Below are positions 25,626 through 39,475 of a stretch of DNA of 64,000 bases, piece by piece. The stretch spans positions 62,001-126,000 of the forward strand of contig JAANOX010000243.1 in the NCBI GenBank assembly GCA_020184695.1, written 5' to 3'. Origin of the DNA: Histomonas meleagridis 2922-C6/04-290x (lineage: Eukaryota > Protista > Parabasalia). The notes below the pieces were generated by a model. The model was not told the origin of the DNA and did no database searches. It was given only the letters and a program-made list of their open reading frames with translations. How positions within the stretch are numbered: the stretch's first letter is position 1; each line of letters opens with the position of its first letter. The position numbers and the translations under genes are program-made.

Positions 25626-27380
25626 ATGCTTTTTATTAAAGGATTCAAAAGAATAAAATTTGATTCAAATAATATTATAAATTGTTTGATAATATTTACT
25701 TTCTTTTTTTCTCATTCTATACAAATGTTTGATGATAAAACATCAACATTAACTATAACAAATTCAGATGAATTTACAGATAATTACAAAAGCACTGCGG
25801 AACATGTTATCATTTCAAATCCAACATATGCTATTCCAAGCAAAGCTTTTTATGAATGGTCATCATTAATTTCAGCAGTGATTAATAAATCAGTCACTTC
25901 AATTGAATCAAATGCGTTTGGTTATTGTTCTAATTTAGAAATAGTTTCATTTGGAGAAGGTATAACATATATTGGAGAATATGCATTTCAATATTGCACT
26001 TCATTAAAAAATATAACAATTGAATGTCCACTTCAAACAGTTGGACAATATGCATTTTGTGATTGCATCAGTCTTGAAACAGCATTTTTCTGTGAAGGTG
26101 TTGAAAAAATTGGAGATTATATGTTTTCTGGCTGTCACAATCTTCAGACAATTACAATACCAAGTACAGTTTCTTCATTAACAAGTTCTTCTTTTTTTGG
26201 ATGCAAAAGTCTTCAATTCATAAATGTTTCTAAAAATAATTCAAAATATTCTAATTATGAATGTGATGGAGTATTATATGATAAAGATATAACAAAACTC
26301 ATTCAATTTCTTCCAGGAAATATCTCAGAAAATTACAAAATTCCAGATTCAGTAACTTCAATTGCAGATTGTGCATTTATTTCATGTTCCAATTTATCTT
26401 CAATTTCATTTGGAAATAGTGTTGAAACGATTGGTTATGCTGCATTTCAATCTTGTGCATTTAAAAACATAATACTTCCAGATTCTGTAACAGGTATTGG
26501 ACAACAAGCATTTTCTGAATGTGCTGAACTTGAAATTGTTGTCATTGGTAAAAATGTGAATAATATTGGAACTAATGCATTTTCGTATTGTACTTCACTC
26601 AAATGTATATTTTATAATGGTGAAACTTCACCAGATTTCAGCGATTCATGTTTTGTTAATGTATCAGCATCTGTGATTGTGCCTGAAGGATATGAAAATG
26701 AAACATTTGGCGAATTAAATGTAATCAAAGGTACGATAAACGATGAATGCCTCCCACCAACGCATACATTTACTCAATCAAACACATACACACGAAGTAA
26801 TACATTCACAAGATCAAACACTTTCACTAAATCAAACACATACACACAAAGTAATACATTCACAAGATCAAACACTTTCACAAAGTCAAATTCATTTACT
26901 ATTTCCAACACATTTTCCGCTTCATTACCACTTGACGGTACATTCACTCGAATATTAATTTCAAAGCACTCGATTACGCAGACGATTATCCCCATTACTA
27001 TCTTCACAAACACAATTGTTGTTACTTTCTTCAACTCTTCATATTATTATATCCAATCCGATTATGTTTTGTATGAATACAAAGTTCACCAATATTCGAC
27101 ATATTACATTTTTTATTCCTACTTATTTACAGTGCTTCAAAGTTATTTCCAACAAGACCAAAAGTTATCTAATGGCCTTATGATTGGCATTATATGCATT
27201 TCGATATATGTTCTTATTTTGATTGTTGGAATTGTTGTGTTTTTAATTAGAAACAAAAAAAAGCAAATTTCAAAGCATAAAACAACATCAAAAAGTTCTG
27301 CTTCAAATAATCATCAAAATGAAATCGTCAATCAAGAATTTAATGATTTATTGCAGGAAGAACAAGATCAATGGATATGA
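25626..27380 (+). CDS. BspA-like leucine-rich-repeat (TpLRR/LRR_5) single-pass surface protein
   Basis: Repeats of IPDSVTSIADCAF..C..L; Ser/Thr stalk; TM GLMIGIICISIYVLILIVGIVVFLI; start moved to ATG 25626 by comparison with the 43815 paralogue (ORF track starts at 25281, so the start is uncertain). Confidence 0.85.
   Translation: MLFIKGFKRIKFDSNNIINCLIIFTFFFSHSIQMFDDKTSTLTITNSDEFTDNYKSTAEHVIISNPTYAIPSKAFYEWSSLISAVINKSVTSIESNAFGYCSNLEIVSFGEGITYIGEYAFQYCTSLKNITIECPLQTVGQYAFCDCISLETAFFCEGVEKIGDYMFSGCHNLQTITIPSTVSSLTSSSFFGCKSLQFINVSKNNSKYSNYECDGVLYDKDITKLIQFLPGNISENYKIPDSVTSIADCAFISCSNLSSISFGNSVETIGYAAFQSCAFKNIILPDSVTGIGQQAFSECAELEIVVIGKNVNNIGTNAFSYCTSLKCIFYNGETSPDFSDSCFVNVSASVIVPEGYENETFGELNVIKGTINDECLPPTHTFTQSNTYTRSNTFTRSNTFTKSNTYTQSNTFTRSNTFTKSNSFTISNTFSASLPLDGTFTRILISKHSITQTIIPITIFTNTIVVTFFNSSYYYIQSDYVLYEYKVHQYSTYYIFYSYLFTVLQSYFQQDQKLSNGLMIGIICISIYVLILIVGIVVFLIRNKKKQISKHKTTSKSSASNNHQNEIVNQEFNDLLQEEQDQWI
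26778..26890 (+). repeat. 18-nt hexapeptide (T-x-S-N-T-F/Y) tandem repeat with a 54-nt higher-order duplication
   Basis: TCAAACACATACACAC begins at both 26778 and 26832, and the two units are near-identical. Confidence 0.85.
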
Positions 27381-27611
27381 TTCGAATTAATTTACTATTA
27401 AATATCTTGAAAAATTTAAAAATGCTATGTAAACAACTTCGTTGTAAATTCTTTTTTTATTAATAATTATTTTATTTTTTTCTTCATTTAATAAAACATT
27501 TCGTTTGATATTTCTTATTTATAATACTTAAGTATTTATAGTTGTTATGTTATAGTCTTTAAAAGTATTAAATAAATGATAATATCAATAATGAATTTTA
27601 GATGATTTTGA

Positions 27612-28286
27612 ATGGTTTATGAAAATTTTAGAGATGAGGAGACACTTTTACACAAGATGAAGGCATCAGAAAGAATGCAATATGCTCCAAAGTTTAAGCA
27701 ATACTTCGGATTGACCCCAAAACAAGTTGCTTCGATGCCAATTCAGGAATTCCAACAAAAACTAAACTTTATCCTTGATCAGCCTCCAATTGAAAAACCA
27801 AAGCCTAAACCCAAAAAAAGAGATACAGCATCTGCTGTAATCAAAAGTAATCAAGACTCAGAGTATGTTGAAGCCTTATCACTTGAAAAAGCTAAAGAAA
27901 TGGAACTCGAATCACAAATGCGCGAAATAGAGAAAATGAAAAAAGAAGAAGACCAAAAGATAGAAGAAGAAAGGGAACAAATGGTTCTACAAAAAAGTGC
28001 AATATTAGAATTAGCAAGACAAATTCCCGAAGAACCTGAAAACGGTGTTTGCATTGCAGTAGTTCTACCCAATGGAAGGAGAGTTCAAAGAAAGTTCTCT
28101 CCGTCAACAAAAGGTGAAGTTATATATCAATGGGTATCAGGATTTGAAGAATTGTTCGAAAATGAATTAAATCCAATTAGCTTCTCACTCGTTCAGGTAC
28201 TTGGTGTGAGAGTTAATGAAGATGAAACAATTGAAGAACAAAAAATGAGAAATCGTGTTCTATTAAATGTTCTCACAGAAGATTAG
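27612..28286 (+). CDS. UBX-domain protein (p97/Cdc48 adaptor family)
   Basis: Charged coiled coil followed by IAVVLPNGRRVQRKF...IYQWV, the UBX ubiquitin-like fold. Confidence 0.8.
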   Translation: MVYENFRDEETLLHKMKASERMQYAPKFKQYFGLTPKQVASMPIQEFQQKLNFILDQPPIEKPKPKPKKRDTASAVIKSNQDSEYVEALSLEKAKEMELESQMREIEKMKKEEDQKIEEEREQMVLQKSAILELARQIPEEPENGVCIAVVLPNGRRVQRKFSPSTKGEVIYQWVSGFEELFENELNPISFSLVQVLGVRVNEDETIEEQKMRNRVLLNVLTED

Positions 28287-28503
28287 ACGGACTTTTAACA
28301 ATGCAAATCAGACATTGCGCTAATGATTCTTGATCTTTAGTGCGTTAAATATAGATACACATTTAAAAATCAGATAGAATAGAAATTTTAATTTTCTAAT
28401 ATACACAATATAGTAAATGTTACTAAGTGGCTGTATTAAAAAAAATTATTCCTTAGATCTGTTTTTTTAATCTTGAAAAATCTTTCTTTAATTCCAACAA
28501 AAG

Positions 28504-28510
28504 AAAAAAA
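28504..28510 (-). terminator. Pol III terminator (T7 run) downstream of tRNA-Trp
   Basis: A7 on the + strand equals T7 on the - strand, a few nt after the tRNA 3' end. Confidence 0.7.
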
Positions 28511-28513
28511 TTT

Positions 28514-28585
28514 TGAGGCCGAAGGGACTCGAACCCCCAACCTTGAGATCTGGAGTCTCACGCAATGCCATTATGCTACAGCCCC
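28514..28585 (-). tRNA. trnW: tRNA-Trp (anticodon CCA)
   Basis: GGGGCTG/CGGCCTC acceptor stem, TGAGA-CTCCAGA-TCTCA anticodon arm, GGTTCGAGTC T-loop; 72 nt, no intron. Confidence 0.95.
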
Positions 28586-28696
28586 TGCTGATAATTTTAA
28601 AATAAATTATTCTAAATTACAATACATTATAAAATTAAATAAAATAAGTTGAATTTGAAATGTTTATCCCAATTATTATCATATCTAAAATATAAA

Positions 28697-29791
28697 TTAT
28701 TTATTTAAAACTCTTTGAAACACATTATCAAACATTTCAACATCTCTTTTTCTGTTTGCAATTCCAAAGGAAGCAACCAAATCATTTCCATCTATTCCGA
28801 ATATTACCTTATTTCTGATAAATTCCATTCGTAGCTCATTTGCATCGACTCCGTCAACTTCAAATGCCACTAATTTTAATTCTTCATTCACCTTAAATCT
28901 TACTTGTGGATATTTTTGTAGCACATCAATAAAAAATTTCATCACTTCATTCACATTTCCAACAACGTCATATTGACTTTTCATTTTCCTCATTAGGTTT
29001 AAGCCTTCGAAAGCTTCAAATATGTTTATCATTGGCGGAGTACCGTTCTCGAGTCTCTTAACGTGCGACTTGAAGCTTCTGTGGATTAAACCACGCGCGC
29101 AACTGAAGGCAACAGCGCCACCGCCATAAAACAGAGGCGAAATTTGTTCTGCTGTATCTAATCGAATTAACGTTGGGCATAATTCAATTCCACAAATTTT
29201 CTTCATCGAAAGTAAAATAAAGTCAACACTATTGTTAGAGAGATCAATCAAATCAAAGGGAGCTGCTTGTGTGGCATCAAAAAGAATATGGTTAAGACCT
29301 GAACTTTTCTTGGCGAAATTCTTGGCTTTTTCTAAATTGGTAGGCGTGTATGTGACACAGAATAATGAATGTGCTGATGATGAGGACTCTGTAGAAGCAA
29401 GAGAAGCGCCAAGTTTTTCGGCAAATAAAATTGCTGTATCATTTTGAATCTGAAAAGATTCATGAAAAATATAATGTGAGCCTCTAGTCCATGGAAAACC
29501 TTCAAATATGCAATCTAGTGCAGCTTGTGGAGATGGAAAAAAAATAACAGTATAATTGATTAAACTTGTCGAAAACATATCAGCAATTGACTTGCGGAAT
29601 AAAGCAGAAATTCTGTCAAACTCACTTTGGTCTTCCGATGAATGTGGAGATGAAAGAATCTGTTGAGAAAGTTCATTTAATCTATCACGTTGAGAATTTG
29701 AAACAAGGCCTGAGGATTTGTAATCAAAATAAGCTGTGTTATTTAGTTGAGGATATTCTTTATCTATAAATTCTTCAAAATCTGATGACAT
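28697..29791 (-). CDS. Class-V PLP-dependent aminotransferase, molybdenum-cofactor-sulfurase N-terminal-like (no MOSC domain)
   Basis: AYFDY, ILFDAT, DFILLSMKKICG (~DFVPISFYKIFG), PLFYGGGAV, RLENGT (~RFEDGT). Confidence 0.75.
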   Translation of the reverse strand: MSSDFEEFIDKEYPQLNNTAYFDYKSSGLVSNSQRDRLNELSQQILSSPHSSEDQSEFDRISALFRKSIADMFSTSLINYTVIFFPSPQAALDCIFEGFPWTRGSHYIFHESFQIQNDTAILFAEKLGASLASTESSSSAHSLFCVTYTPTNLEKAKNFAKKSSGLNHILFDATQAAPFDLIDLSNNSVDFILLSMKKICGIELCPTLIRLDTAEQISPLFYGGGAVAFSCARGLIHRSFKSHVKRLENGTPPMINIFEAFEGLNLMRKMKSQYDVVGNVNEVMKFFIDVLQKYPQVRFKVNEELKLVAFEVDGVDANELRMEFIRNKVIFGIDGNDLVASFGIANRKRDVEMFDNVFQRVLNK

Positions 29792-30012
29792 AGGATTTTG
29801 TCACTTTTTGATTATGACCAAAAGAAACACAAAGTCACATTACAAAGAATGAGAAGCAAATCAGGGCATAAGAGTTCGGTATATAATGGAATAAAAACGT
29901 TAAGAATTGGTTTTTTAATGAACGATTAAATATCTCAAAAATAGTGATATATTGAGTCATGCAGAATTTGTAATTTTTTCGTTTTTGGATTTATTTTACT
30001 TTCGGTGCAAAA

Positions 30013-30528
30013 TTAGTTGTCCTCTTTAGGAACAGCTATTGGAATTTCCTTCAAAATTTCAAGAATTACTTCCGTACAAGGCTTCTGCTGTGAATCTTTG
30101 AGTTGTGCGCTGACTTCGTAGTGGAAAATTTTGAAGATACCGCAGATAACACCTGGGAGCATTGATGTATAGCGAAGACCAGCATAACGTTCAGGAACAG
30201 TTACATTTTGTGTGAAAATTGATTGGTCGAATGTAAGCAAATACTTCTTTGGATCAGAATCACTTAATACTGAGTATGAAACATTTGTTCCTTTACCTGC
30301 TACACTTGGCCAGTTCTTGACAATTATTTCTTTGATAACTTTAGTAGGTGTATCTATGCGTTCAAGACTTCGATCACGGGCAAATTCATGTGCAAGTCGA
30401 ACACCAATTCTACATCCTATTTCGTAAAGTTTCTTGTTTACTTCTTCAACGTTTTCCTCTGTTTCCAATAAGGAATTGACGAGAGATCCATAAATTAATG
30501 ATGAAAACTCGATCGAAGGAGTTGCCAT
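30013..30528 (-). CDS. BET3: TRAPP complex subunit Bet3/TRAPPC3-like
   Basis: EFSSLIYGSLVNSLL...EEVNKKLYEIGCRIGVRLAHEF matches the Bet3 N-terminus; LRYTSMLPGVICG ~ LxYSNLLCGVLRG. Confidence 0.8.
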   Translation of the reverse strand: MATPSIEFSSLIYGSLVNSLLETEENVEEVNKKLYEIGCRIGVRLAHEFARDRSLERIDTPTKVIKEIIVKNWPSVAGKGTNVSYSVLSDSDPKKYLLTFDQSIFTQNVTVPERYAGLRYTSMLPGVICGIFKIFHYEVSAQLKDSQQKPCTEVILEILKEIPIAVPKEDN

Positions 30529-30577
30529 AGCAAATTGACGATTTCACATAACATTTCAGTGTAAAAATTCATATCAA

Positions 30578-31306
30578 ATGTCAGAGGATGGGAAAACAAA
30601 ATATACTGTACAAAGAAGAAGAATTGCATGGTCAATAATGTCACACTCAAGAATAATGCTAAAAATTAGCATACATCCTCATATATCAACAGCTTTTTTA
30701 ATGCTTCACAAATATTATCAAAGATACCCTAATACAGAATACGGACTTTTAACTTTAATTACTTCTTCGATTTTCGTGTCATGTAAATCACACGAAGATC
30801 CACATTCTATGCAAAGTATTTACTCAGCTTTACTTTATTGCAGTAGAAATCTTTCAAAGAAATCAACACCAGAATTTATTTCAGCCATTTTAGAAACAAA
30901 CAATCTTGATGAAAAGAAAATTCCTGATGTTGAGGTTGATCAAATTAATAAATGTGAACTTGATCTTCTTGAATCACTTGATTTCAAACTCGACTATAAG
31001 CTTCCATTTGATTACGTTGATCAATACGTTAGACCTTATCTTTCTAAGCTTGACCTGGAAATACAAAAAAATCTTCAAAACAAATTGCCATGTAATCTTT
31101 GTGTTATCTTATGTTCAGAACGTTGCATAAATTATCCAGCGGAAATCATGGCGGTGGCAGCCACTATTAATTCATTTGAAAATATCCCATTTCCAGAAGA
31201 GATTTTCCAATGGATTTCGTTCGAAAGAGAAAAATTTGGCGCATCTGAAATTGATAATGTTTGTTTGCTTTTGAGGGAAGAACTGGATGCAATTGCATCC
31301 AAATGA
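30578..31306 (+). CDS. Cyclin-fold protein (transcriptional cyclin K/L/T-like)
   Basis: ISTAFLMLHKYY, LITSSIFVSCKSHE, CELDLLESLDFKLDYKLPFDYV cyclin-box motifs. Confidence 0.75.
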   Translation: MSEDGKTKYTVQRRRIAWSIMSHSRIMLKISIHPHISTAFLMLHKYYQRYPNTEYGLLTLITSSIFVSCKSHEDPHSMQSIYSALLYCSRNLSKKSTPEFISAILETNNLDEKKIPDVEVDQINKCELDLLESLDFKLDYKLPFDYVDQYVRPYLSKLDLEIQKNLQNKLPCNLCVILCSERCINYPAEIMAVAATINSFENIPFPEEIFQWISFEREKFGASEIDNVCLLLREELDAIASK

Positions 31307-31514
31307 TATAGATTTATAAATAATTTTTTGTAAATATTTTTTTTTCATGTTTTTATTCTCAAATGATAATTAACATTCAATTTGCGAATGAATTTTTTCT
31401 TTTCATTCCAATGTATTTTTGAATTTGTTTACAATGATACCATGAATGTGTTATATTCATTTAACCTAATAAATTATCAGAACACGAGGAGTAATAATAA
31501 TGCTTGAAAGAAAA

Positions 31515-33360
31515 AAGCACGTTTACAATTTTCAATTGAAATTAATTCACATACGATGTTAATTTTTTAAGGGAAGAAAGACAGAATGGAAAAATTACGA
31601 AATATAGGGAATTCACCATTAGTCCCAATTCCATTTCCAGATGGACGAAATATTACATTACAAGAGGTTAATCAATTTTTACGAGGAAGAAGTCCATTTT
31701 TACCCACAGTTATTTTTTTATTTCGTCAAACAGTTGAATTTCCTAATCCATGTCCTATTGAGTATAAAATTATTTATCTTCCTAAAGGACGTCTTCCAGA
31801 TGGTATTGAGTTTTCATTATTTAAACGTTTTATATCAGAAAGTTTAGATAAGTCACCTACACAATTTATTGGAGTTTGTACACGTCGAAACAGTGATTTA
31901 TGTTATTATTTTATTATTCGATGGTTAATTGAAGAACTTTCATATTCTCTTTCAGAAAGTCTTTCAGTTATTCAAGAATATTATTCTCAAGGTATTACTA
32001 AAACTAAATATCTTCAATCATTAAAAGATATTTATTTAGATATTACAGAAGATGGACGACTAATGAATAAAATTGTTAATAAATCAAATAAATCAAATAA
32101 TAATAACAAAAACAAAACGATTTTATCACGTAATAATAATAACAATGAAATTATAAATATTGAAATAACGAAAGAAATAATTGAAGGAGAAGAAGAAGGT
32201 AAAACAAATTATAAAGAAGAAAAACAAGATGAAACAGTATTCTATAATATTGGCCGAAATGTTGATTATCGAAACAAAGAAAACATCCGTAATTCATTAC
32301 GAATATTATTAGAAGTTCCAGAAGAAAGTATTATATTTTCACGATATTATCAATTTAATTCACGTATTGTTAATCATATTAATAATGATATTACACATCA
32401 TTATATTTGCATGCCAGAGCCACCTGGCAAACGATGTTTATTATTTCTTCGGGGTCCAGAACGCTATTTAATCAGTGACAATGATAATTTTTACACGTGA
32501 AGTTAATATTTATTTACCTGAAAATAATAATCGCACACAATGTTTAACATCTACTATATTAGAAGGTATATTAACATATTCACCAACTAATACACGACAT
32601 AAATATTATTATATTACTGATATTTATCGATATGAAGGCGAAGATTTACAACATAAAACGTATGATTCACGAATGGGTTATGCGTTTAAAGTTATTCAAT
32701 CACGGAAACATCAAGAACGACATAAATTATTTGTTGAAGAATTTCAAAATGATGACTTTAGTATTGAATTACGTCCATATTTACGTTTGAAATATCTTGA
32801 TACATTACTTAATAATCCACATCAATTTTTACCTATTGACCCCATTGGAATTGTATTTTGTAATAAAGATATAAATAATGAGAAATATACTAAATTTTAT
32901 ATTTGGACAGAACATTCACAAGATCCGATTACAGTTCAAATTACTAATGATTATACACATAACGAAAGTTTTGGTAGTGTAGTTTCAGGTTCAGAGATGA
33001 CACCGATTTTTAGTTTTGGACGAATTACTGAAACATTAGAAAAATACGATGGACAATTTGTTGATGTTGAAATGACTGATGTTAAACAGCGAACATGGCG
33101 CGTTTGCGGCTTATCAGAAGAATATACCGCGACGACACTCCGAAACTTTCAACGAATTTTACAACGCGCACAAGGCACATTATATAGCAAAGAAGACTTA
33201 CAACGAGATATTCAACAAAACGATTCAACTTCCTCAATATGTTGATGAAGAACGTGCGATTCAATCACGAAAAAAATAAATGTTATTTTATTAATAAATT
33301 TCTTTTATATGTTCTTTTTATTTTATTATGTAAATTTATGAAATTTTATATTTGAAAATA
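31515..33360 (+). repeat. Left arm of a ~1.85 kb inverted segmental duplication
   Basis: Reverse complement of 34352-36205; identity begins at AAGCACGTTTAC and ends at TTTGAAAATA. Confidence 0.95.
31586..33279 (+). CDS. mRNA capping enzyme (RNGTT-type triphosphatase + guanylyltransferase + OB fold) paralogue, copy 1; two +1 frameshifts
   Basis: ORFs 31586-32500, 32475-33245 and the tail to 33279 join if T5 at ~32490 and A4 at ~33218 are each shortened by one, as in copy 2 (~563 aa); motifs IGVCTRRNSD, PEPPGKRCLL, ILEGIL, YYITDI, PIGIVF. Confidence 0.75.
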
Positions 33361-33463
33361 AATTCAAATACTATATTTCTTTGAATATTTTTCAATAACT
33401 CAAACTTGGAAATTTTCTTATGATTTTTCAAATTGTTGATATTTTTTTTATTAATTTTTTCTT

Positions 33464-33990
33464 TTAAATCATTTTTAATGTATTCCATTTAGAAAATGTT
33501 TGAGTTGGAAAAAAAGATTCATTATACGTTTCTTTGGTGATATTTAATTCACCAAATGTTTCACTTGAATATGCTTCTGATACCATAACATTTGTAGCTA
33601 AAGCATCAGTAAAGCAATCATGCCCAAATAATGGAGAAGATATATAGATATATATATAGATATATATATATTTAGTGAAGCACAATAAGAAAATATATGA
33701 TTTTCAATGGTTATCACATTTGCTCCAGTGATAAGGCTTTATAATTGTTTTCATATTAAAAATGCATTTGATTCCAATTATGCAATTTGGAATTATGAAA
33801 CTTGCGAGTGAACATGAAACAAATGTAGCATAGCAACGAACTTTTCATTATATTTACATTATTTTTTAATGAAATTGTTAATAAGTTGATTGAAATGCAA
33901 ATGATTCAATTGATGTGTCTGAATTTGGAACTTTGAATGTGTTATTAGTATTTCCATTCATAAAAAACATCATATTATTAATAAGATAAT
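33464..33990 (-). pseudogene. Decayed BspA fragment in the spacer of the inverted duplication
   Basis: Reverse strand reads TFKVPNSDTSIESFAF, SFIIPN, GANVITIENHIFSYCASL, FGHDCF...SETFGELN...PTQTFS, collinear with the 43815 gene, with stops and frameshifts. Confidence 0.8.
33640..33670. repeat. (AT)n microsatellite with G interruptions
   Basis: ATATATAGATATATATATAGATATATATATA. Confidence 0.8.
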
Positions 33991-34351
33991 TGTTATTTCA
34001 TTCGAAATGATTACATCCTTTGTATCGCTTATTAATCATTTGTATTTTCATTTGATTTCTTTATATTCAATGTTGGTGTGTCATGATCAAGACATTTGAT
34101 AGCATAATTTGATAGCATGAGAAAAAAATTTTAAATGAAATATTACGAATATTTATTTTAGAATAAATTAAAATATATGATATAATAATATTTTCATTTT
34201 TTTATAGAACCAATACTTAAATATATCATTAAAAAAATCAAAATGAAGGTTTACTTGACTTATGAGAGATTTTAGATCATCATCTTCAATATAAGAATAA
34301 TTATTGCCTCAAAAAATATAAAAACCCAATAGCAAATGAGTTTATTAGATA

Positions 34352-36205
34352 TATTTTCAAATATAAAATTTCATAAATTTACATAATAAAATAAAAAGAA
34401 CATATAAAAGAAATTTATTAATAAAATAACATTTATTTTTTTCGTGATTGAATCGCACGTTCTTCATCAACATATTGAGGAAGTTGAATCGTTTGTTGAA
34501 TATCTCGTTGTAAGTCTTCTTTGCTATATAATGTGCCTTGTGCGCGTTGTAAAATTCGTTGAAAGTTTCGGAGTGTCGTCGCGGTATATTCTTCTGATAA
34601 GCCGCAAACGCGCCATGTTCGCTGTTTAACATCAGTCATTTCAACATCAACAAATTGTCCATCGTATTTTTCTCTAATGTTTCAGTAATTCGTCCAAAAC
34701 TAAAAAAATCGGTGTCATCTCTGAACCTGAAACTACACTACCAAAACTTTCGTTATGTGTATAATCATTAGTAATTTGAACTGTAATCGGATCTTGTGAA
34801 TGTTCTGTCCAAATATAAAATTTAGTATATTTCTCATTATTTATATCTTTATTACAAAATACAATTCCAATGGGGTCAATAGGTAAAAATTGATGTGGAT
34901 TATTAAGTAATGTATCAAGATATTTCAAACGTAAATATGGACGTAATTCAATACTAAAGTCATCATTTTGAAATTCTTCAACAAATAATTTATGTCGTTC
35001 TTGATGTTTCCGTGATTGAATAACTTTAAACGCATAACCCATTCGTGAATCATACGTTTTATGTTGTAAATCTTCGCCTTCATATCGATAAATATCAGTA
35101 ATATAATAATATTTATGTCGTGTATTAGTTGGTGAATATGTTAATATACCTTCTAATATAGTAGATGTTAAACATTGTGTGCGATTATTATTTTCAGGTA
35201 AATAAATATTAACTTCACGTGTAAAATTATCATTGTCACTGATTAAATAGCGTTCTGGACCCCGAAGAAATAATAAACATCGTTTGCCAGGTGGCTCTGG
35301 CATGCAAATATAATGATGTGTAATATCATTATTAATATGATTAACAATACGTGAATTAAATTGATAATATCGTGAAAATATAATACTTTCTTCTGGAACT
35401 TCTAATAATATTCGTAATGAATTACGGATGTTTTCTTTGTTTCGATAATCAACATTTCGGCCAATATTATAGAATACTGTTTCATCTTGTTTTTCTTCTT
35501 CTTTATAATTTGTTTTACCTTCTTCTTCTCCTTCAATTATTTCTTTCGTTATTTCAATATTTATAAGTTCATTGTTATTATTATTACGTGATAAAATCGT
35601 TTTTGTTTTTTTGTTATTATTATTTGATTTATTTGATTTATTAACAATTTTATTCATTAGTCGTCCATCTTCTGTAATATCTAAATAAATATCTTTTAAT
35701 GATTGAAGATATTTAGTTTTAGTAATACCTTGAGAATAATATTCTTGAATAACTGAAAGACTTTCTGAAAGAGAATATGAAAGTTCTTCAATTAACCATC
35801 GAATAATAAAATAATAACATAAATCACTGTTTCGACGTGTACAAACTCCAATAAATTGTGTAGGTGACTTATCTAAACTTTCTGATATAAAACGTTTAAA
35901 TAATGAAAACTCAATACCATCTGGAAGACGTCCTTTAGGAAGATAAATAATTTTATACTCAATAGGACATGGATTAGGAAATTCAACTGTTTGACGAAAT
36001 AAAAAAATAACTGTGGGTAAAAATGGACTTCTTCCTCGTAAAAATTGATTAACCTCTTGTAATGTAATATTTCGTCCATCTGGAAATGGAATTGGGACTA
36101 ATGGTGAATTCCCTATATTTCGTAATTTTTCCATTCTGTCTTTCTTCCCTTAAAAAATTAACATCGTATGTGAATTAATTTCAATTGAAAATTGTAAACG
36201 TGCTT
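34352..36205 (-). repeat. Right arm of the inverted segmental duplication
   Basis: Reverse complement of 31515-33360, with two in-frame 3-nt indels, an I/L substitution and four frame-changing indels between the arms. Confidence 0.95.
34433..36134 (-). CDS. mRNA capping enzyme paralogue, copy 2; frameshifted near the 3' end
   Basis: ORFs 34674-36134 and 34433-34639 join if the extra TT (34702-34708 run) and extra AG (~34672) are removed, as in copy 1 (~565 aa). Confidence 0.75.
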
Positions 36206-36474
36206 CTCATCATAAATAAAAATTAAATTTCCCAAAAAATCATATGTATCTAAATTCAAATTCGATTCTTTTTTAAATTCCAGGATAAAAAATAGTGAAC
36301 TTTCGGTAGCCACTTCAATTTATAACTTCATTCTCATTATTATTCCAAATGATTTAAAAGTTTTCAGCAAACCCACTCATCCTCCTCATGCACATCCATA
36401 ATTTTATGATTTAAACCAAATTAAAAGTAGAATGAAAATGCTATTGGTTTTATGTAAAAACATGTTATACAGCA

Positions 36475-38235
36475 CTAGAGAAACTTCACAACTTCTCTAT
36501 GCACTTCATTTCTTAACTTTGACCTTTTCCACCTTGTCAAGCTATAATTTAAGATTTTTGATATTCCGCTTATTTCACCTGCAATCATTTCAGGAGACCA
36601 ATTGTAGTACATTCCAATCTGCTCTATAAATTCAAGACAGTGTTGCATGTTCCTTAACACGTATTTGTGTAATTCTAGAACATATTTTTCAGGTTTGAAT
36701 ATTACCAAAGTTTCTGTTACGAACTCGGCAAATTCAATGGACTGCGTTATTGGCTTTTCGATTTGATTCTCGATTAGGTCTCTGAGAGATTCTGGTGATT
36801 CATCATTATTTATGTAACAAGTAACAGATGCCATAGCATCATATATTGGCCAGCAATCAATCATTCCAGCTTCGTCAATAGCATAGCTTATCTCAAGATG
36901 GCTATAGAAAGTCGGCCTAAATTTCATATGAATCATCCATGATGAGCTATGAACAAGATGTTCATTATCTGTTTTAACGGCCTCTCTTAGTATACCTAAA
37001 AGAATTTCGTAGTTATAAGGGATTCCATTTGGTGACCCAAAATCTTCGAAACTGCAAAGTCCCTCAACGATAAACTCCATAAAAACCGCTCCAAACCGCT
37101 CCTTTACGTCTGAATGTTCATTCAAAAAGTCAGAGTTATTAACGGTCGCTGCAAATACATCAAGAATTATTTGCATTATATCTGTTTTGTTGATATATTT
37201 CAATTCATTAAGCTGATGAATCAGGTCACACCCTTCGTTGAACATGTCGTCTGTCTTTAAAAGAGAAATTAGATAATCACGAGTCATTCGATTTGACCAA
37301 TATGGACAAATATATCCTGTGGTATTAAACTCATGGATAACACGATCACCGCCAACCGAAGGAAACTCAAAATGGGGGATTTGAGGAAGTAATTTTGATG
37401 TCATCCAATTTTTCTCCCTAGCTTCTAAAAGATCAAGAATTTTGAACCTAAGATGAGATGGTAATGTCCTGGGAATTGCTTTGAGCTTGTTAAAGAATTC
37501 ATTTCCCTTCGGATGATTATCAATAAGTTTTCCACAAGCAATTGCGATATTGAATACGGCCTCAAGAGAACGCACAGTTCCTAGATCAAATTGGCGCGTG
37601 AGAAAATCAAAGGTTTGATCCACAGAAGTTAATCTTAAATTACATAGAAAACCAATAAAAAGTGCTTGTCCAGGAGTGACTTCATTTTGTGGATCAAAAC
37701 AAATCTGCTTTATTTTGTCTATTAGGTCATTTGGCAAGTAGTATTTAAGATTTAATGCACATGTGAAAAAAGCATATAAAGGTGCAAAAGCCCACTGACC
37801 AAAAGCTACTTTCGTGATCGCAGAAGCGTATGTGTCCGAAAAATCATCTATCTTATAAAGCCGTGCAAATTCATCTAGAAAAAAATCAAATTTTGGGAAA
37901 GTAAGTTTGTTGAGACTTAGCGTGATTTCAGTCTTGATTGTTCGTTGTTCTGCTTCTGTTATTACTCTGCGCATTTTCGGGAAAAAGCTTTTACGATAAT
38001 TTTGGAAAGCATTTTGCATTATTTCGAATTCCTTTCCTGTAATTTTTAGATTGTGGCGAAAGCTTATAATTTCTTGAATAGAATACATTTTAGGAATTCG
38101 AAGGGTTTCAGCATTTGAAAAATTAATGAACATTGAAGTCATTTTAAGTTGGACATTTTCTGTTGTTTTAGTTGGGCACCATTCGGTGACAGGCTGTCTT
38201 GCATTTCTAGTTTGATGAGGAATGCACCGAGCCAT
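36475..38235 (-). CDS. eIF4G-like protein (MIF4G plus probable MA3-like helical domain)
   Basis: First ATG at 38235 (MARCIP), preceded by Inr-like TCATA; SLNKLTFPKF, FAPLYA, FIGFL, LRFKILDLLEAREKNW are MIF4G signatures. Confidence 0.7.
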   Translation of the reverse strand: MARCIPHQTRNARQPVTEWCPTKTTENVQLKMTSMFINFSNAETLRIPKMYSIQEIISFRHNLKITGKEFEIMQNAFQNYRKSFFPKMRRVITEAEQRTIKTEITLSLNKLTFPKFDFFLDEFARLYKIDDFSDTYASAITKVAFGQWAFAPLYAFFTCALNLKYYLPNDLIDKIKQICFDPQNEVTPGQALFIGFLCNLRLTSVDQTFDFLTRQFDLGTVRSLEAVFNIAIACGKLIDNHPKGNEFFNKLKAIPRTLPSHLRFKILDLLEAREKNWMTSKLLPQIPHFEFPSVGGDRVIHEFNTTGYICPYWSNRMTRDYLISLLKTDDMFNEGCDLIHQLNELKYINKTDIMQIILDVFAATVNNSDFLNEHSDVKERFGAVFMEFIVEGLCSFEDFGSPNGIPYNYEILLGILREAVKTDNEHLVHSSSWMIHMKFRPTFYSHLEISYAIDEAGMIDCWPIYDAMASVTCYINNDESPESLRDLIENQIEKPITQSIEFAEFVTETLVIFKPEKYVLELHKYVLRNMQHCLEFIEQIGMYYNWSPEMIAGEISGISKILNYSLTRWKRSKLRNEVHREVVKFL

Positions 38236-39067
38236 GAAAAAGTTATGATTAACTCTGCTAAGATTTTCATTCAATTTAGAAGTCAAAACCAATTCAGAAA
38301 AATTAGGATGTAAATTACAGAAATCATTTTGGCGATCGGTTTTTTCCCAGAGAAACACTTCACCTTGCAACCGTCCTTAACGTACGACTCAAGCTCTGAA
38401 ATTATTTCAATTGAATTCTCTCTTCGGTTGTGAGGACGATAAGGGAAAATATTCAAGAAGATATTGGCGTAGTTGTGGAAGCATTAATTTGATGTTTTTT
38501 AAAACAGTAAATTGAACTTCTTTTTTCGAACGAAGTAAGCTAAGAATGGATATAAAGGTCTCTGCTCAAAAAAGAGAGTCATTTATAATGGCTTGTAACA
38601 ACAGAAAAAAGCAGATGTAATTATTCCTGGATTTACACGGAAAAGTTGTGGAAAATTTTTTCTATAACAGATTTGGCGAATTTTGGATCATTTGGAGAGA
38701 AGTCGCGAATAAAATCAAGAAAATGTATAATTTTCCATTCTGATAAATCTTCGATAACTTTGGGTAAATTATCTACTGTTTTAATGTTTATAGTAATTAG
38801 CTGTGTTATCTTTGTTCAATTTATTTCTTGCATTGTGAAAATAGCATTTGGATAAAATTAAAAGATTATTCTGCAAGTTATGAAGTATAAAATCAAATTA
38901 AAACAGAATCAATGCAATTCTTGGTGGAAAATAGAGATTTATTGCCTGATTATTATACATCTGAGCATCGATTGCCACCATTAGATGATGACGATTGCTC
39001 AATAAATAATAAATAAATAAAATGAAAGTATTTTTAATAGTAAAATTATTACAATATATAAAAATTA

Positions 39068-39475
39068 TTATTCGTCGTCAGAAAAAGATGGAACTGATAA
39101 TCGTGTAAGTTGATATACAAGATCAACTAATTGATCTGTCATATATTCATACCCATAGTCTTGAGGTATTTCCATTGGTGGCGCTTCAAGTCTTGTGGGA
39201 ATGAAATTTAATTCAAATTCATATCCTTTTTCAGGTTCATATTTTTGTGTATTTTCAGGTGGTTTTCTTTTAATCTGTGATCTTGGCTTTGGTGGCATTA
39301 CTTCAATTGGTGTTAAATTTTTGCATATTTTAGTTTTGTACTTAACATTTAATTTAGGTGATACTTCATCAATAAGGAATTCTTCATCATCAACAAGTGA
39401 TTGTTCAAGTTCTTTCAGGTGTTCTTCAATAAATTTTGTACTGAACTCTATTGGCTGATCAGAAGGTTGTTCCAT
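39068..39475 (-). CDS. Hypothetical acidic/proline-rich 135-aa protein
   Basis: ATG-started ORF with protein-like composition; TCACA Inr-like elements upstream; no family recognised. Confidence 0.6.
   Translation of the reverse strand: MEQPSDQPIEFSTKFIEEHLKELEQSLVDDEEFLIDEVSPKLNVKYKTKICKNLTPIEVMPPKPRSQIKRKPPENTQKYEPEKGYEFELNFIPTRLEAPPMEIPQDYGYEYMTDQLVDLVYQLTRLSVPSFSDDE

What the first reader, a model, noticed from the sequence alone, without database searches (positions are those of the whole stretch)
31586..36134. Full-length mRNA capping enzyme paralogue with every catalytic motif degenerate (double pseudo-enzyme), present in two copies
Seen: the reconstructed ~565-aa protein follows the metazoan-type bifunctional capping enzyme along its whole length (triphosphatase, linker, nucleotidyltransferase, OB fold ..TETLEKYDGQFVD..WRV..). 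Known: that family needs HCxxGxxRT, motif I KxDG (the Lys forms the GMP adduct), motif V K-W-K and motif VI RxDK. Here the P-loop reads IGV-CTRRNSD (no His, Arg replaced by Asp), motif I reads PEPPGKR (no Lys; similar to the PxGKR of the cap-binding snurportin fold), motif V reads YIWTE and motif VI reads LSEE. The structural motifs III/IIIa/IV (ILEGIL, YYITDI, PIGIVF) persist. Inference: a retained non-catalytic cap- or RNA-5'-end-binding, or Pol II CTD-scaffolding, protein; a possible regulator or partner of the active capping enzyme that has recently been amplified.
Basis: partly seen in the sequence, partly recalled or inferred. Interest (0 to 1): 0.78.

Follow-up and report, generated by a model that had tools for sequence, protein, structure and literature searches.

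The report
Dead capping-enzyme paralogue, two copies
A poultry-parasite (Histomonas meleagridis) genome carries two identical, expressed copies of a gene that keeps the whole shape of the enzyme that caps messenger RNAs but has lost the catalytic residues of both its active sites, and it belongs to an old, undescribed family of such 'dead' capping enzymes in parabasalid protists.

Summary
Two inverted, tail-to-tail copies (31515-33363 + and 34349-36205 -) encode a 563-aa protein that is collinear with the bifunctional mRNA capping enzyme. The family profile matches human RNGTT at E 5e-29. The model of the window's own first 477 residues gives Z 22-23 for the guanylyltransferase domain and Z 15.5 for the phosphatase domain.

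Short-read contigs, polyadenylated RNA contigs and a second assembly of the same locus (H. meleagridis WSYJ01000029.1) all support an intact ORF and identical copies.

The catalytic residues are gone: P-loop His, Cys and Arg; motif I Lys; motif III Glu; motif IV Asp; motif V K-x-K; motif VI R-x-D-K. This is not decay. An orthologue at 65% identity keeps the ORF (dN/dS 0.27; 0.13-0.18 in the guanylyltransferase and OB parts). At least 25 degenerate relatives, including Tritrichomonas foetus TRFO_30168 and TRFO_36643 and a second Histomonas protein, form one clade apart from the canonical enzymes. H. meleagridis also has an intact canonical capping enzyme.

What the protein binds or regulates is inferred only.

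The parts
31515..33363 (+). Copy A of the duplicated unit: 71 bp upstream, the gene, and 84 bp downstream
   Evidence: Inverted-repeat arms and pairwise alignment. A single 1844-bp short-read contig at 2x depth spans 31515-33360.
31586..33279 (+). Copy A coding sequence: 563 codons plus stop once the two spurious bases at 32488 and 33217 are removed
   Evidence: Both bases are absent from DNA contig X1, RNA contigs X5 and X6 and assembly L007.
34349..36205 (-). Copy B of the duplicated unit, inverted and tail-to-tail with copy A
   Evidence: An 'opposite strands' junction contig joins 33360 to 34345. The inverted copy is also present in L007.
34433..36134 (-). Copy B coding sequence, broken in this assembly by +TT (about 34707-34708) and +AG (about 34674-34675). 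Three further in-frame differences from copy A lie at 35493-35607.
   Evidence: In L007 the 35493-35607 differences are absent and the two indels are shorter. The collapsed 2x contig shows no variants.
31586..32050 (+). Triphosphatase-like (cysteine-phosphatase fold) domain, residues 1-155
   Evidence: Model of the window's own protein: VIA Z 15.5 to baculovirus RNA 5'-phosphatase 1yn9. Orthologue model: Z 16.7 to 1yn9 and Z 15.5 to the Mce1 triphosphatase 1i9t. Profile match to RNGTT residues 84-183.
31868..31903 (+). Degenerate P-loop IGVCTRRNSDLC: His becomes Cys, nucleophile Cys becomes Thr, Arg becomes Leu
   Evidence: Across the 25 clade members: His 0, Cys 1, Arg 0.
31919..31936 (+). 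RWLIEE helix after the dead P-loop, a clade-specific conserved signature
   Evidence: R112 and W113 in 23 of 25, E117 in 25 of 25 clade members, against 7, 0 and 3 of 18 canonical enzymes.
32051..32227 (+). Low-complexity Asn/Lys/Glu-rich linker, predicted disordered
   Evidence: pLDDT below 50 for residues 155-206. dN/dS 0.56.
32228..32912 (+). Nucleotidyltransferase-like domain, residues 215-442
   Evidence: VIA Z 22-23, rmsd 2.5-2.7 A over 215-224 residues against Pce1, Cgt1 and human GTase. Pfam PF01331 E 1.9e-6.
32414..32434 (+). Motif I remnant PEPPGKR: catalytic Lys becomes Glu278; Gly and Arg are kept
   Evidence: Across the clade: Lys 1/25, Glu 15/25, Gly 24/25, Arg 20/25.
32556..32573 (+). 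Motif III remnant ILEGIL (DGE becomes EGI)
32607..32624 (+). Motif IIIa YYITDI, Asp retained
   Evidence: Asp in 25 of 25 clade members.
32841..32858 (+). Motif IV remnant PIGIVF (Asp becomes Ile, Gly kept)
32898..32912 (+). Motif V remnant YIWTE (K-W-K becomes I-W-T)
32913..33137 (+). OB-fold domain, residues 443-517, containing the motif VI remnant CGLSEE at 33105-33122 (RxDK becomes LSEE)
   Evidence: The orthologue model aligns to GTase+OB chains through residue ~540. for the motif.
33138..33276 (+). Conserved helical C-terminal tail, residues 518-563
   Evidence: pLDDT 94-98 in the orthologue model. The tail is almost identical to the orthologue; OB+tail dN/dS is 0.13.
33298..33298 (+). 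Poly(A) addition site of the transcript
   Evidence: Contig X6 ends at 33298 with 14 non-templated A (table 7). The genomic sequence continues TTCTTTT.
33364..34348 (.). Unique 985-bp spacer between the two copies, with no recognisable gene
   Evidence: No RNA contig depth over most of it.

Best explanation
SHOWN: This is a real, intact gene present as two identical inverted copies in Histomonas meleagridis and transcribed into a polyadenylated mRNA. It encodes a 563-aa paralogue of the metazoan/plant/parabasalid-type bifunctional mRNA capping enzyme. The protein keeps all three folds (cysteine-phosphatase, nucleotidyltransferase, OB). It has lost every residue that does chemistry in either active site. 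It belongs to an old family of such proteins, with at least three subclades, that split from the canonical parabasalid capping enzyme before Histomonas and Tritrichomonas diverged. Both dead domains evolve under purifying selection. The species keeps a separate, fully intact capping enzyme for the catalytic job.

INFERRED: The protein works without catalysis, as a binding or scaffolding module that reuses capping-enzyme surfaces. It most likely acts in RNA 5'-end or transcription-coupled processes. It could dock where the active enzyme docks (Pol II, Spt5 or the capping machinery) and so regulate or partner it, or it could hold a nucleoside or cap-like ligand in the remodelled cleft, as snurportin does with the same fold. 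The clade-specific invariant RWLxEE helix next to the dead P-loop and the conserved PEPxGxR loop suggest new, selected interaction sites rather than leftovers.
For: Intact ORF and expression:
- DNA contig X1 (1844 bp, depth 1053 against about 500 in the flanks) and RNA contigs X5 and X6 (31598-33294 and 31608-33298) carry exactly the two corrections that restore the frame.
- X6 ends in a non-templated A14.
- The spacer has no RNA contig depth over most of its length.
- A second assembly, L007, differs from the window only at indel sites inside the two copies.
- P0008, a 93-aa gene call on L007, is 100% identical to the corrected C-terminus.

Homology:
- RNGTT E 4.8e-29, collinear.
- Foldseek E 7e-25 to full-length RNGTT.
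- VIA Z 22-25 for the GTase domain and 15.5-16.7 for the RNA 5'-phosphatase fold.
- Model pLDDT 91.1 and 86.2.

Catalytic loss is family-wide. In 25 clade members: P-loop His 0, Cys 1, Arg 0; motif I Lys 1; motif III Glu 0; motif IV Asp 2; motif V first Lys 0; motif VI Arg 4. In 18 canonical enzymes these residues are intact in 16-18.

Selection:
- The orthologue L001 is 64.6% identical with an intact 546-codon ORF at dS about 1.2.
- omega is 0.27 (0.21-0.33) overall, 0.35 for the TPase-like domain, 0.18 for the NTase domain and 0.13 for OB plus tail.

Clade: SH-aLRT 100 for the 25 degenerate proteins, which include TRFO_30168, TRFO_36643 and H. meleagridis GPJ56_004347. The canonical parabasalid enzymes form a separate 100-supported group.

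Intact paralogue in the same species: P0103 'mRNA-capping enzyme [Histomonas meleagridis]' has HCTHGYNRT, KSDGTR, LLDGE, DGIIF, KWK and RTDK.

Precedents:
- T. vaginalis TvCE is an active enzyme of this type, and H125S, C126S or R526A impair or abolish its activities (PMC2904801).
- Snurportin's cap-binding domain shares the fold at Z 15.2.
Against: - No ligand or partner has been shown; the mechanism is inference from fold and conservation.
- Most residues conserved in the cleft (Gly of motifs I, III and IV; the Asp345-Arg362 pair; Trp of motif V) are also conserved in active enzymes and may be purely structural.
- The NTase and OB domains are on average more acidic than in canonical enzymes (net charge +1.0 against +3.0 and -2.4 against -0.9; the window's OB domain is -7). 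This speaks weakly against binding a triphosphate bridge or RNA backbone.
- Absence of the canonical residues does not by itself prove absence of all catalysis.
- Runs X5 and X6 are labelled RNA only as a guess, although the poly(A) end and the gene-shaped coverage fit RNA.
- X1 may come from the sample used for the assembly.
- dS is near saturation, so omega is approximate.
- Only five clade members carry an organism name; the rest come from metagenomes or Logan assemblies.
Confidence: 0.72

Rival explanations
1. Cap-reader or transport adaptor of the snurportin type. The Lys-less guanylyltransferase fold binds a (hyper)methylated cap dinucleotide and the protein escorts capped RNPs. It would be the parabasalid counterpart of, or a convergent analogue to, snurportin-1.
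For: - Pfam PF21974 (snurportin m3G-cap-binding domain) E 1.1e-5, almost as good as PF01331 for the single sequence.
- The family profile hits snurportin chains at E 3e-4 to 1e-3.
- Foldseek E about 1e-6 with 20% identity.
- VIA Z 15.2, rmsd 3.2 A over 174 residues.
- Motif I Lys is absent while Gly-x-Arg is kept.
Against: - The capping enzyme is far closer: 104 bits against 22 bits, and Z 23 against 15.
- The N-terminus is a phosphatase fold, not an importin-beta-binding domain, and Pfam finds no snurportin N-terminal domain.
- A full OB domain is present.
- The cleft has lost its basic residues and the OB domain is acidic.
- Cap-contacting residues of snurportin were not mapped here.
- From my own recollection, unverified: T. 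vaginalis spliceosomal snRNAs have been reported to lack a cap.
Confidence: 0.12
2. Still an enzyme, with non-canonical chemistry. For example it could be a phosphatase using Ser or Thr or another nucleophile, or a nucleotidyltransferase that works without a lysyl-NMP intermediate or on a new substrate.
For: - Strong purifying selection on both domains.
- Conserved new signatures at or near the old active sites: PEPxGxR with Glu in 15 of 25, Ser or Thr at the old Cys position in 20 of 25, and the invariant RWLxEE helix.
- From general knowledge: some 'pseudoenzymes' have later been shown to be active.
Against: - All phosphate-contacting basic residues of both sites are missing at once (P-loop Arg 0/25, motif V first Lys 0/25, motif VI Lys 0-2/25).
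- The replacing residues vary among orthologues: P-loop RRNSD against RKLGS, and motif III Glu against Tyr between the window and L001. That is not what a new active site would look like.
- In TvCE single substitutions of these residues impair or abolish activity (PMC2904801).
Confidence: 0.08
3. Binding module recruited to a process unrelated to RNA 5' ends. The fold would be reused as a protein-protein interaction scaffold, as in STYX-type pseudophosphatases.
For: - Acidification of the former nucleotide and RNA cleft.
- The family has expanded into at least three subclades, with members of 1000+ aa carrying long extra regions that match no Pfam domain. This suggests diversified roles.
- Nothing in the genomic context links it to RNA processing.
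Against: - All three capping-enzyme domains have been retained together and collinear in nearly all members for a long time. This is easier to explain if the whole capping-enzyme surface, including its docking on the transcription machinery, is what is used.
- There is no positive evidence for any other pathway.
Confidence: 0.15
4. Recently duplicated pseudogenes in decay. On this reading the frameshifts in both copies are real and the motif losses are part of the decay.
For: As assembled, both copies are interrupted. The other public assembly also shows interruptions, at partly different sites.
Against: - The interruptions differ between the two assemblies and are absent from short-read and RNA contigs.
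- Six of the seven inter-copy differences are indels and only one is a substitution. This is the signature of unpolished long-read error in a two-copy repeat.
- The orthologue and 25 relatives keep long intact ORFs with the same motif losses, and omega is 0.27.
Confidence: 0.02

Closest known systems
Bifunctional mRNA capping enzyme, cysteine-phosphatase triphosphatase fused to guanylyltransferase (human RNGTT/Mce1; Trichomonas vaginalis TvCE TVAG_187730; H. meleagridis P0103)
   Same: Same three-domain architecture in the same order and of similar length (563 against 560-597 aa). Collinear profile match at E 4.8e-29. Folds at Z 22-25 and 15-17. Retained: Gly and Arg of motif I, Gly of motifs III and IV, Asp of motif IIIa, Trp of motif V.
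   Different: No HCx5R(S/T), no KxDG lysine, no motif III Glu, no motif IV Asp, no K-x-K, no RxDK. About 15-25% identity only. Clade-specific RWLxEE and PEPxGxR signatures and a conserved helical C-terminal tail. It forms a separate clade with 100% support.
Snurportin-1 m3G-cap-binding domain (PF21974; PDB 1XK5)
   Same: Guanylyltransferase-type fold without the catalytic lysine, used for binding rather than catalysis. Weak but significant sequence and fold similarity: Pfam E 1e-5, profile E 3e-4, Z 15.2.
   Different: Snurportin has an importin-beta-binding N-terminus and no phosphatase domain. The match is much weaker than to capping enzymes. Cap-contacting residues were not compared here. 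No cap binding has been shown for this protein.
STYX-type pseudophosphatases (general knowledge; not searched here)
   Same: A dual-specificity or cysteine-phosphatase fold whose nucleophile Cys is replaced, here by Ser or Thr in 20 of 25 members, and which is retained under selection as a non-catalytic domain.
   Different: Here the P-loop Arg is also lost, with an Asp sitting beside it. The domain is the RNA-triphosphatase subtype (closest to BVP, Mce1 and PIR1/DUSP11). It is fused to a second dead enzyme domain.
Other lineage-specific degenerate capping-enzyme-like proteins found here (Adineta steineri CAF1513430.1, Globisporangium ultimum K3WGD1, Chytridium lagenaria KAI8850409.1, Anaeramoeba flamelloides KAJ3432976.1, Allacma fusca CAG7834741.1)
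   Same: Bifunctional capping-enzyme architecture with partly degenerate P-loop and/or motif I.
   Different: They group with the canonical enzymes, not with the parabasalid clade. They retain more motifs (for example Adineta keeps LKWK and RSDK) and appear to be independent, younger events.

Membership tests
Bifunctional mRNA capping enzyme (RNGTT/TvCE type) | N-terminal cysteine-phosphatase-fold RNA triphosphatase domain | tested here: met
   Window model: VIA Z 15.5 to BVP 1yn9. Orthologue model: Z 16.7 to 1yn9 and 15.5 to Mce1 1i9t. The profile aligns to RNGTT 84-183.
Bifunctional mRNA capping enzyme (RNGTT/TvCE type) | P-loop HCxxxxxR(S/T) with nucleophile Cys and phosphate-binding Arg | tested here: not met
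   The window reads IGVCTRRNSDLC. Thr sits at the Cys position and Leu at the Arg position. Across the clade: His 0/25, Cys 1/25, Arg 0/25.
Bifunctional mRNA capping enzyme (RNGTT/TvCE type) | Nucleotidyltransferase plus OB fold of the covalent NTase superfamily | tested here: met
   Z 22-25, rmsd 2.5-2.7 A over 215-231 residues against Pce1, Cgt1 and human GTase. The full-length orthologue model aligns through the OB domain.
Bifunctional mRNA capping enzyme (RNGTT/TvCE type) | Motif I KxDG lysine that forms the enzyme-GMP adduct | tested here: not met
   RNGTT K294 aligns with Glu278 (PEPPGKR). Lys is present in 1 of 25 clade members.
Bifunctional mRNA capping enzyme (RNGTT/TvCE type) | Motifs III (DGE), IV (DG), V (KxK) and VI (RxDK) catalytic side chains | tested here: not met
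   They read EGI, IG, IWT and LSEE in the window.
Bifunctional mRNA capping enzyme (RNGTT/TvCE type) | Pfam PF01331 at or above the gathering score | tested here: not met
   28.3 bits against a cut-off of 29.6 (E 1.9e-6). 11 of 20 clade members match at E <= 0.01.
Bifunctional mRNA capping enzyme (RNGTT/TvCE type) | GTP-dependent enzyme-GMP formation and gamma-phosphate hydrolysis | not testable with these tools
   Needs recombinant protein assays.
Snurportin-1 | Lys-less GTase-like cap-binding domain (PF21974) | tested here: inconclusive
   26.0 bits against a cut-off of 27 (E 1.1e-5). Profile against PDB snurportin E 3e-4. Z 15.2. In every test the match is weaker than to capping enzymes.
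Snurportin-1 | N-terminal importin-beta-binding domain | tested here: not met
   The N-terminal 155 residues are a phosphatase fold, and Pfam returns no such domain.
Snurportin-1 | Aromatic residues that sandwich the m3G cap | not tested
   No residue-level alignment to snurportin was obtained.
Pseudophosphatase (STYX-like) | Phosphatase fold with the catalytic Cys replaced, retained under selection | tested here: met
   Fold at Z 15-17. Cys becomes Ser or Thr in 20 of 25. omega is 0.35 (0.24-0.52) for this domain.
Parabasalid capping-enzyme-like clade (defined here) | Groups with TRFO_30168, TRFO_36643 and GPJ56_004347 to the exclusion of canonical enzymes, and shares the xEPxGxR and RWLxEE signatures | tested here: met
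   SH-aLRT 100 for the 25-row clade and 96 for the 12-row subclade holding the window's protein. Signatures.

The most novel reading that the evidence does not exclude
Parabasalids carry an old, expanded family of 'double-dead' capping-enzyme paralogues that has become a new class of non-catalytic factor. It could be a reader of cap or 5'-end structures, or a decoy or partner that occupies the capping enzyme's docking site on the transcription machinery. Its own selected interaction sites would be the RWLxEE helix and the PEPxGxR loop. This would be a second, independent conversion of the guanylyltransferase fold into a binding protein, as happened for snurportin, and here the triphosphatase domain is converted as well.
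Probability: 0.3. Interest if true: 0.75.

Novelty: new variant of a known kind. Interest (0 to 1): 0.6.

Why it matters
Capping is essential and is being pursued as a drug target in trichomonads (TvCE: PMC2904801; TvRNMT preprint 10.64898/2026.09.09.750033).

A conserved, expressed family that mimics the whole capping enzyme without its chemistry would be an unrecognised layer of that pathway in parabasalids. These include pathogens of poultry, cattle and humans.

It is also a clean natural case of a two-domain enzyme in which both active sites were lost together while the protein was kept for a long time.

Practically, the gene is missing from the public H. meleagridis annotation except for a 93-aa fragment. 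The cause is that long-read indel errors were left unpolished in this two-copy repeat. This shows how duplicated genes can be hidden by assembly artefacts.

The family members in T. foetus, T. musculus and H. meleagridis are annotated only as hypothetical proteins. I found no paper that mentions them.

Tried and rejected
- The word-index protein search with the 486-aa ORF found only one relative, and with a 20-sequence profile only four. The exhaustive HMMER search was needed to see the family.
With the orthologue as query it found nothing.
- Cluster look-ups gave organism names for only a minority of members. I could not establish whether T. vaginalis has a member. Contig look-ups of P0058, P0033 and P0003 gave only metagenome or Logan sources.
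- Pfam on the long family members (P0019, P0022, P0023, P0087, P0009, P0020) found no extra domain that might hint at function.
- ESM Atlas searches only returned canonical capping-enzyme clusters.
- Literature searches found nothing: capping enzyme with pseudoenzyme, and the locus tags. The snurportin/guanylyltransferase search returned 17 papers, none about this family. The supplements of the H. meleagridis genome paper do not mention a capping enzyme.
- Scans for a sigma-70-type promoter and for a trichomonad Inr-like TCAYW upstream of the ATG were uninformative.
- The YN00 dN/dS estimator failed with a math domain error, probably because dS is near saturation, so NG86 with a codon bootstrap was used.
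- Rejected readings: pseudogene decay; assembly-artefact palindrome (unique 985-bp spacer, four junction contigs, 2x depth, two assemblies); snurportin orthologue.

Full report
WHAT IS IN THE SEQUENCE

The interval holds two near-identical copies of one gene in inverted, tail-to-tail orientation. Unit A is 31515-33363 (+) and unit B is 34349-36205 (-), separated by a unique 985-bp spacer. Each unit hugs the gene, with 71 bp upstream of the ATG and 84 bp after the stop.

As assembled, neither copy is one ORF. Copy A is split at 32488 (T5 against T4) and at 33217 (A4 against A3). Copy B is split by +TT near 34707 and +AG near 34674. Over about 1850 bp the copies differ by one substitution and six indel events. 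That ratio is typical of uncorrected long-read error and not of divergence.

THE BREAKS ARE ASSEMBLY ERRORS, AND THE GENE IS EXPRESSED

Public runs were laid on 31400-34345.
- In DNA run X1 a single 1844-bp contig covers 31515-33360 at k-mer depth 1053. The flanking and spacer contigs have depth about 480-520. Its only differences from the window are the loss of one base at 32488 and one at 33217.
- That contig joins two different contigs on each side: the two outer flanks, and the two ends of the spacer, one of them in opposite orientation. This is the graph signature of an exact two-copy inverted repeat.
- Runs X5 and X6 come from a different study and are labelled RNA by guess. They give contigs 31598-33294 and 31608-33298 with the same two corrections.
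- X6 ends in 14 non-templated A at 33298, and the spacer has no depth over most of its length.

This is a discrete polyadenylated mRNA with an intact ORF.

Removing the two bases gives a 563-codon ORF. A 93-aa gene call in the protein collection (P0008) is 100% identical to the corrected C-terminus. It lies on NCBI WSYJ01000029.1, and WSYJ is one of the two Histomonas meleagridis genome projects (PMC8529796).

That locus (L007) is 99.9% identical to window 26997-39287 and differs only at indel sites inside the two gene copies.
- It lacks the extra bases at 32488 and 33217.
- It lacks all of copy B's N-terminal differences.
- It has shorter versions of copy B's two indels.
- It has a spurious T of its own at 32599.

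Two assemblies with different frameshift patterns at the same error-prone sites, and clean short-read and RNA contigs, mean the gene is intact and the copies are identical. The window is therefore H. meleagridis. Its G+C content of about 28% fits.

The likely reason the errors survived is that short reads cannot be placed uniquely in an exact repeat during polishing. This is inference.

IT IS A CAPPING-ENZYME PARALOGUE OVER ITS WHOLE LENGTH

Sequence evidence:
- The single protein hits human RNGTT at E 5e-6, with two collinear stretches, one in the triphosphatase and one in the guanylyltransferase.
- Pfam PF01331 scores 28.3 bits, just under its cut-off.
- A profile of 20 family members hits RNGTT at E 4.8e-29 in one stretch, profile 59-512 to RNGTT 84-563. 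It also hits PIR1/DUSP11 at 2e-15 and snurportin at 3e-4.

Structure evidence:
- AlphaFold models are confident. The orthologue has pLDDT 91.1. The window's own first 477 residues have pLDDT 86.2. Only the Asn/Lys/Glu-rich linker is disordered.
- Foldseek's best hit is full-length RNGTT in the Pol II capping complex (8p4c_M, E 7e-25, 538 columns).
- Domain by domain for the window's own protein, the nucleotidyltransferase domain gives Z 22-23 (rmsd 2.5-2.7 A over 215-224 residues) to Pce1, Cgt1 and human GTase, against Z 15.2 to snurportin.
- The N-terminal domain gives Z 15.5 to the baculovirus RNA 5'-phosphatase.
- The orthologue model adds the OB domain, with Z 23-25 to GTase+OB chains.

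BOTH ACTIVE SITES ARE STRIPPED

From the profile alignment to RNGTT and a 43-sequence alignment:
- P-loop IGVHCTHGFNRT becomes IGVCTRRNSDLC. His becomes Cys98, nucleophile Cys becomes Thr99, and Arg becomes Leu105 with Asp104 beside it.
- Motif I KADGTR becomes EPPGKR, so Lys294 becomes Glu278.
- Motif III DGE becomes EGI.
- Motif IIIa keeps its Asp.
- Motif IV DG becomes IG.
- Motif V KWK becomes IWT.
- Motif VI RxDK becomes LSEE.

In T. vaginalis TvCE, which has the human P-loop and all six motifs, R526A abolished guanylyltransferase activity, and H125S or C126S affected both activities (PMC2904801).

IT IS NOT DECAY BUT AN OLD FAMILY

The only close relative in the word-index search was a 1985-bp metagenome contig (L001). 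Its third frame is an intact 546-codon orthologue at 64.6% identity.
- Conservation is high in the three folded parts and the C-terminal tail, and low in the linker.
- NG86 omega with a codon bootstrap is 0.27 (0.21-0.33) overall, 0.35 (0.24-0.52) for the dead phosphatase domain, 0.18 for the dead transferase domain, 0.13 for OB plus tail and 0.56 for the linker. dS is about 1.2.

The exhaustive HMMER search found 77 proteins at E <= 1e-3.
- The top ~28 lack both HCx5R and KxDG. Most carry xEPxGxR in place of motif I.
- Canonical enzymes (HCTHGFNRT, KxDGxR, DGE, KWKP, RxDK) appear only from E 1e-10 downward.

Counts for 25 clade members against 18 canonical enzymes:

| Site | Clade (of 25) | Canonical (of 18) |
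|---|---|---|
| P-loop His | 0 | 18 |
| P-loop Cys | 1 | 18 |
| P-loop Arg | 0 | 18 |
| Motif I Lys | 1 | 18 |
| Motif III Glu | 0 | 17 |
| Motif IV Asp | 2 | 16 |
| Motif V first Lys | 0 | 17 |
| Motif VI Arg | 4 | 16 |

In a maximum-likelihood tree the 25 degenerate proteins form one clade (SH-aLRT 100) with three subclades. The window's protein sits with T. foetus TRFO_30168.

Named members are TRFO_30168, TRFO_36643, TRFO_39731, T. musculus M9Y10_040794 and H. meleagridis GPJ56_004347. All are annotated as hypothetical proteins.

The canonical parabasalid enzymes form their own 100-supported group. It includes 'mRNA-capping enzyme [Histomonas meleagridis]' (P0103), which has every catalytic motif and is only about 26% identical to the window's protein.

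HOW IT PROBABLY WORKS

Shown: the fold is retained, the chemistry is lost, the gene is under selection, it is expressed, and a separate active enzyme exists.

Inferred: the protein has a non-catalytic binding or scaffolding role. Two features look selected rather than residual.
- The helix after the dead P-loop is RWLxEE in nearly all members (R112 and W113 in 23 of 25, E117 in 25 of 25), but not in canonical enzymes.
- The loop replacing motif I is conserved as PEPxGxR.

I consider two sub-models about equally likely.
- (a) It docks on the same partners as the active enzyme (the transcription machinery or the enzyme itself) and regulates or accompanies capping.
- (b) It holds a nucleoside or cap-like ligand in the remodelled cleft, as snurportin does.

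Against (b), the cleft has lost its basic residues, and the NTase and OB domains are more acidic than in canonical enzymes. A role outside RNA metabolism cannot be excluded. Residual or novel catalysis is unlikely, because the replacing residues differ even between close orthologues.

COMPARISON WITH WHAT IS KNOWN, AND NOVELTY

The protein is a homologue of the bifunctional capping enzyme but fails every catalytic membership criterion. It resembles snurportin in principle, as a Lys-less GTase fold, and STYX-type pseudophosphatases in principle, as a Cys-less phosphatase fold. It is a member of neither family.

I found no paper on it. The TvCE paper reports a single capping-enzyme gene found by BLASTp.

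I rate it a new variant of a known kind: a conserved double pseudoenzyme family derived from the capping enzyme.

Partly degenerate capping-enzyme-like proteins also turned up in a rotifer, an oomycete, a chytrid, Anaeramoeba and a springtail. They group with canonical enzymes and look like separate, younger events.

LIMITS

- No ligand or partner has been tested.
- Only five clade members have organism names.
- Presence in T. vaginalis was not established.
- X1 may come from the assembly's own sample, and the RNA label of X5 and X6 is a guess, though it is supported by the poly(A) end.
Its intactness rests on the collapsed 2x contig and on L007.
- dS is near saturation.

Noticed in passing
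window 32488, 33217, 34672-34708, 35493-35607; L007:5602: All differences between the window and the public H. meleagridis contig WSYJ01000029.1 over 12.3 kb are indels (plus one substitution) inside the two gene copies. Each assembly has its own spurious frameshifts. In the gene calls listed for that contig, only a 93-aa C-terminal fragment (P0008) of this gene is called. Exact repeats in these assemblies seem to have escaped polishing, so other duplicated genes may be hidden in the same way.
   Followed up: yes
P0028 (H. meleagridis GPJ56_004347, 466 aa; not in the window): A second member of the dead-capping-enzyme clade in the same species, in a different subclade. It is the only one of 25 that keeps a Lys at the motif I nucleophile position (TPKPHGIR), but it lacks motifs III, IV, V and VI.
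   Followed up: partly
P0032, P0044, P0049, P0060, P0074 (other organisms): Partly degenerate bifunctional capping-enzyme-like proteins occur in Adineta steineri, Globisporangium ultimum, Allacma fusca, Chytridium lagenaria and Anaeramoeba flamelloides. They group with canonical enzymes, which suggests repeated independent birth of capping-enzyme pseudoenzymes.
   Followed up: partly
P0022, P0023, P0087, P0019 (T. foetus TRFO_39731, T. musculus M9Y10_040794 and unnamed relatives): Family members of 770-1080 aa carry long extra regions with no Pfam match. UniRef labels one of them 'DEP domain-containing', which Pfam did not reproduce here.
   Followed up: partly
L001:15-17: The orthologue contig has an in-frame TGA one codon before the conserved N-terminal SPLVPIPFPDG, only 14 nt from the contig end, and no ATG upstream. 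This is probably a contig-end error or a missing start, but it is unresolved.
   Followed up: no
window 33364-34348: The spacer between the copies has no recognisable gene. Short-read contigs break at an imperfect (TA/ATAG)n run at 33633-33680. A 33-nt piece (33531-33563) matches other contigs and transcripts with 3 mismatches, so it may be part of a dispersed element.
   Followed up: no
window 30013-31306 and 36475-38370: Neighbours are a TRAPP subunit (PF04051, E 9e-18), a weak cyclin-N-like ORF (E 2.6e-4) and a 631-aa ORF with no Pfam match. Nothing links them to RNA processing.
   Followed up: partly
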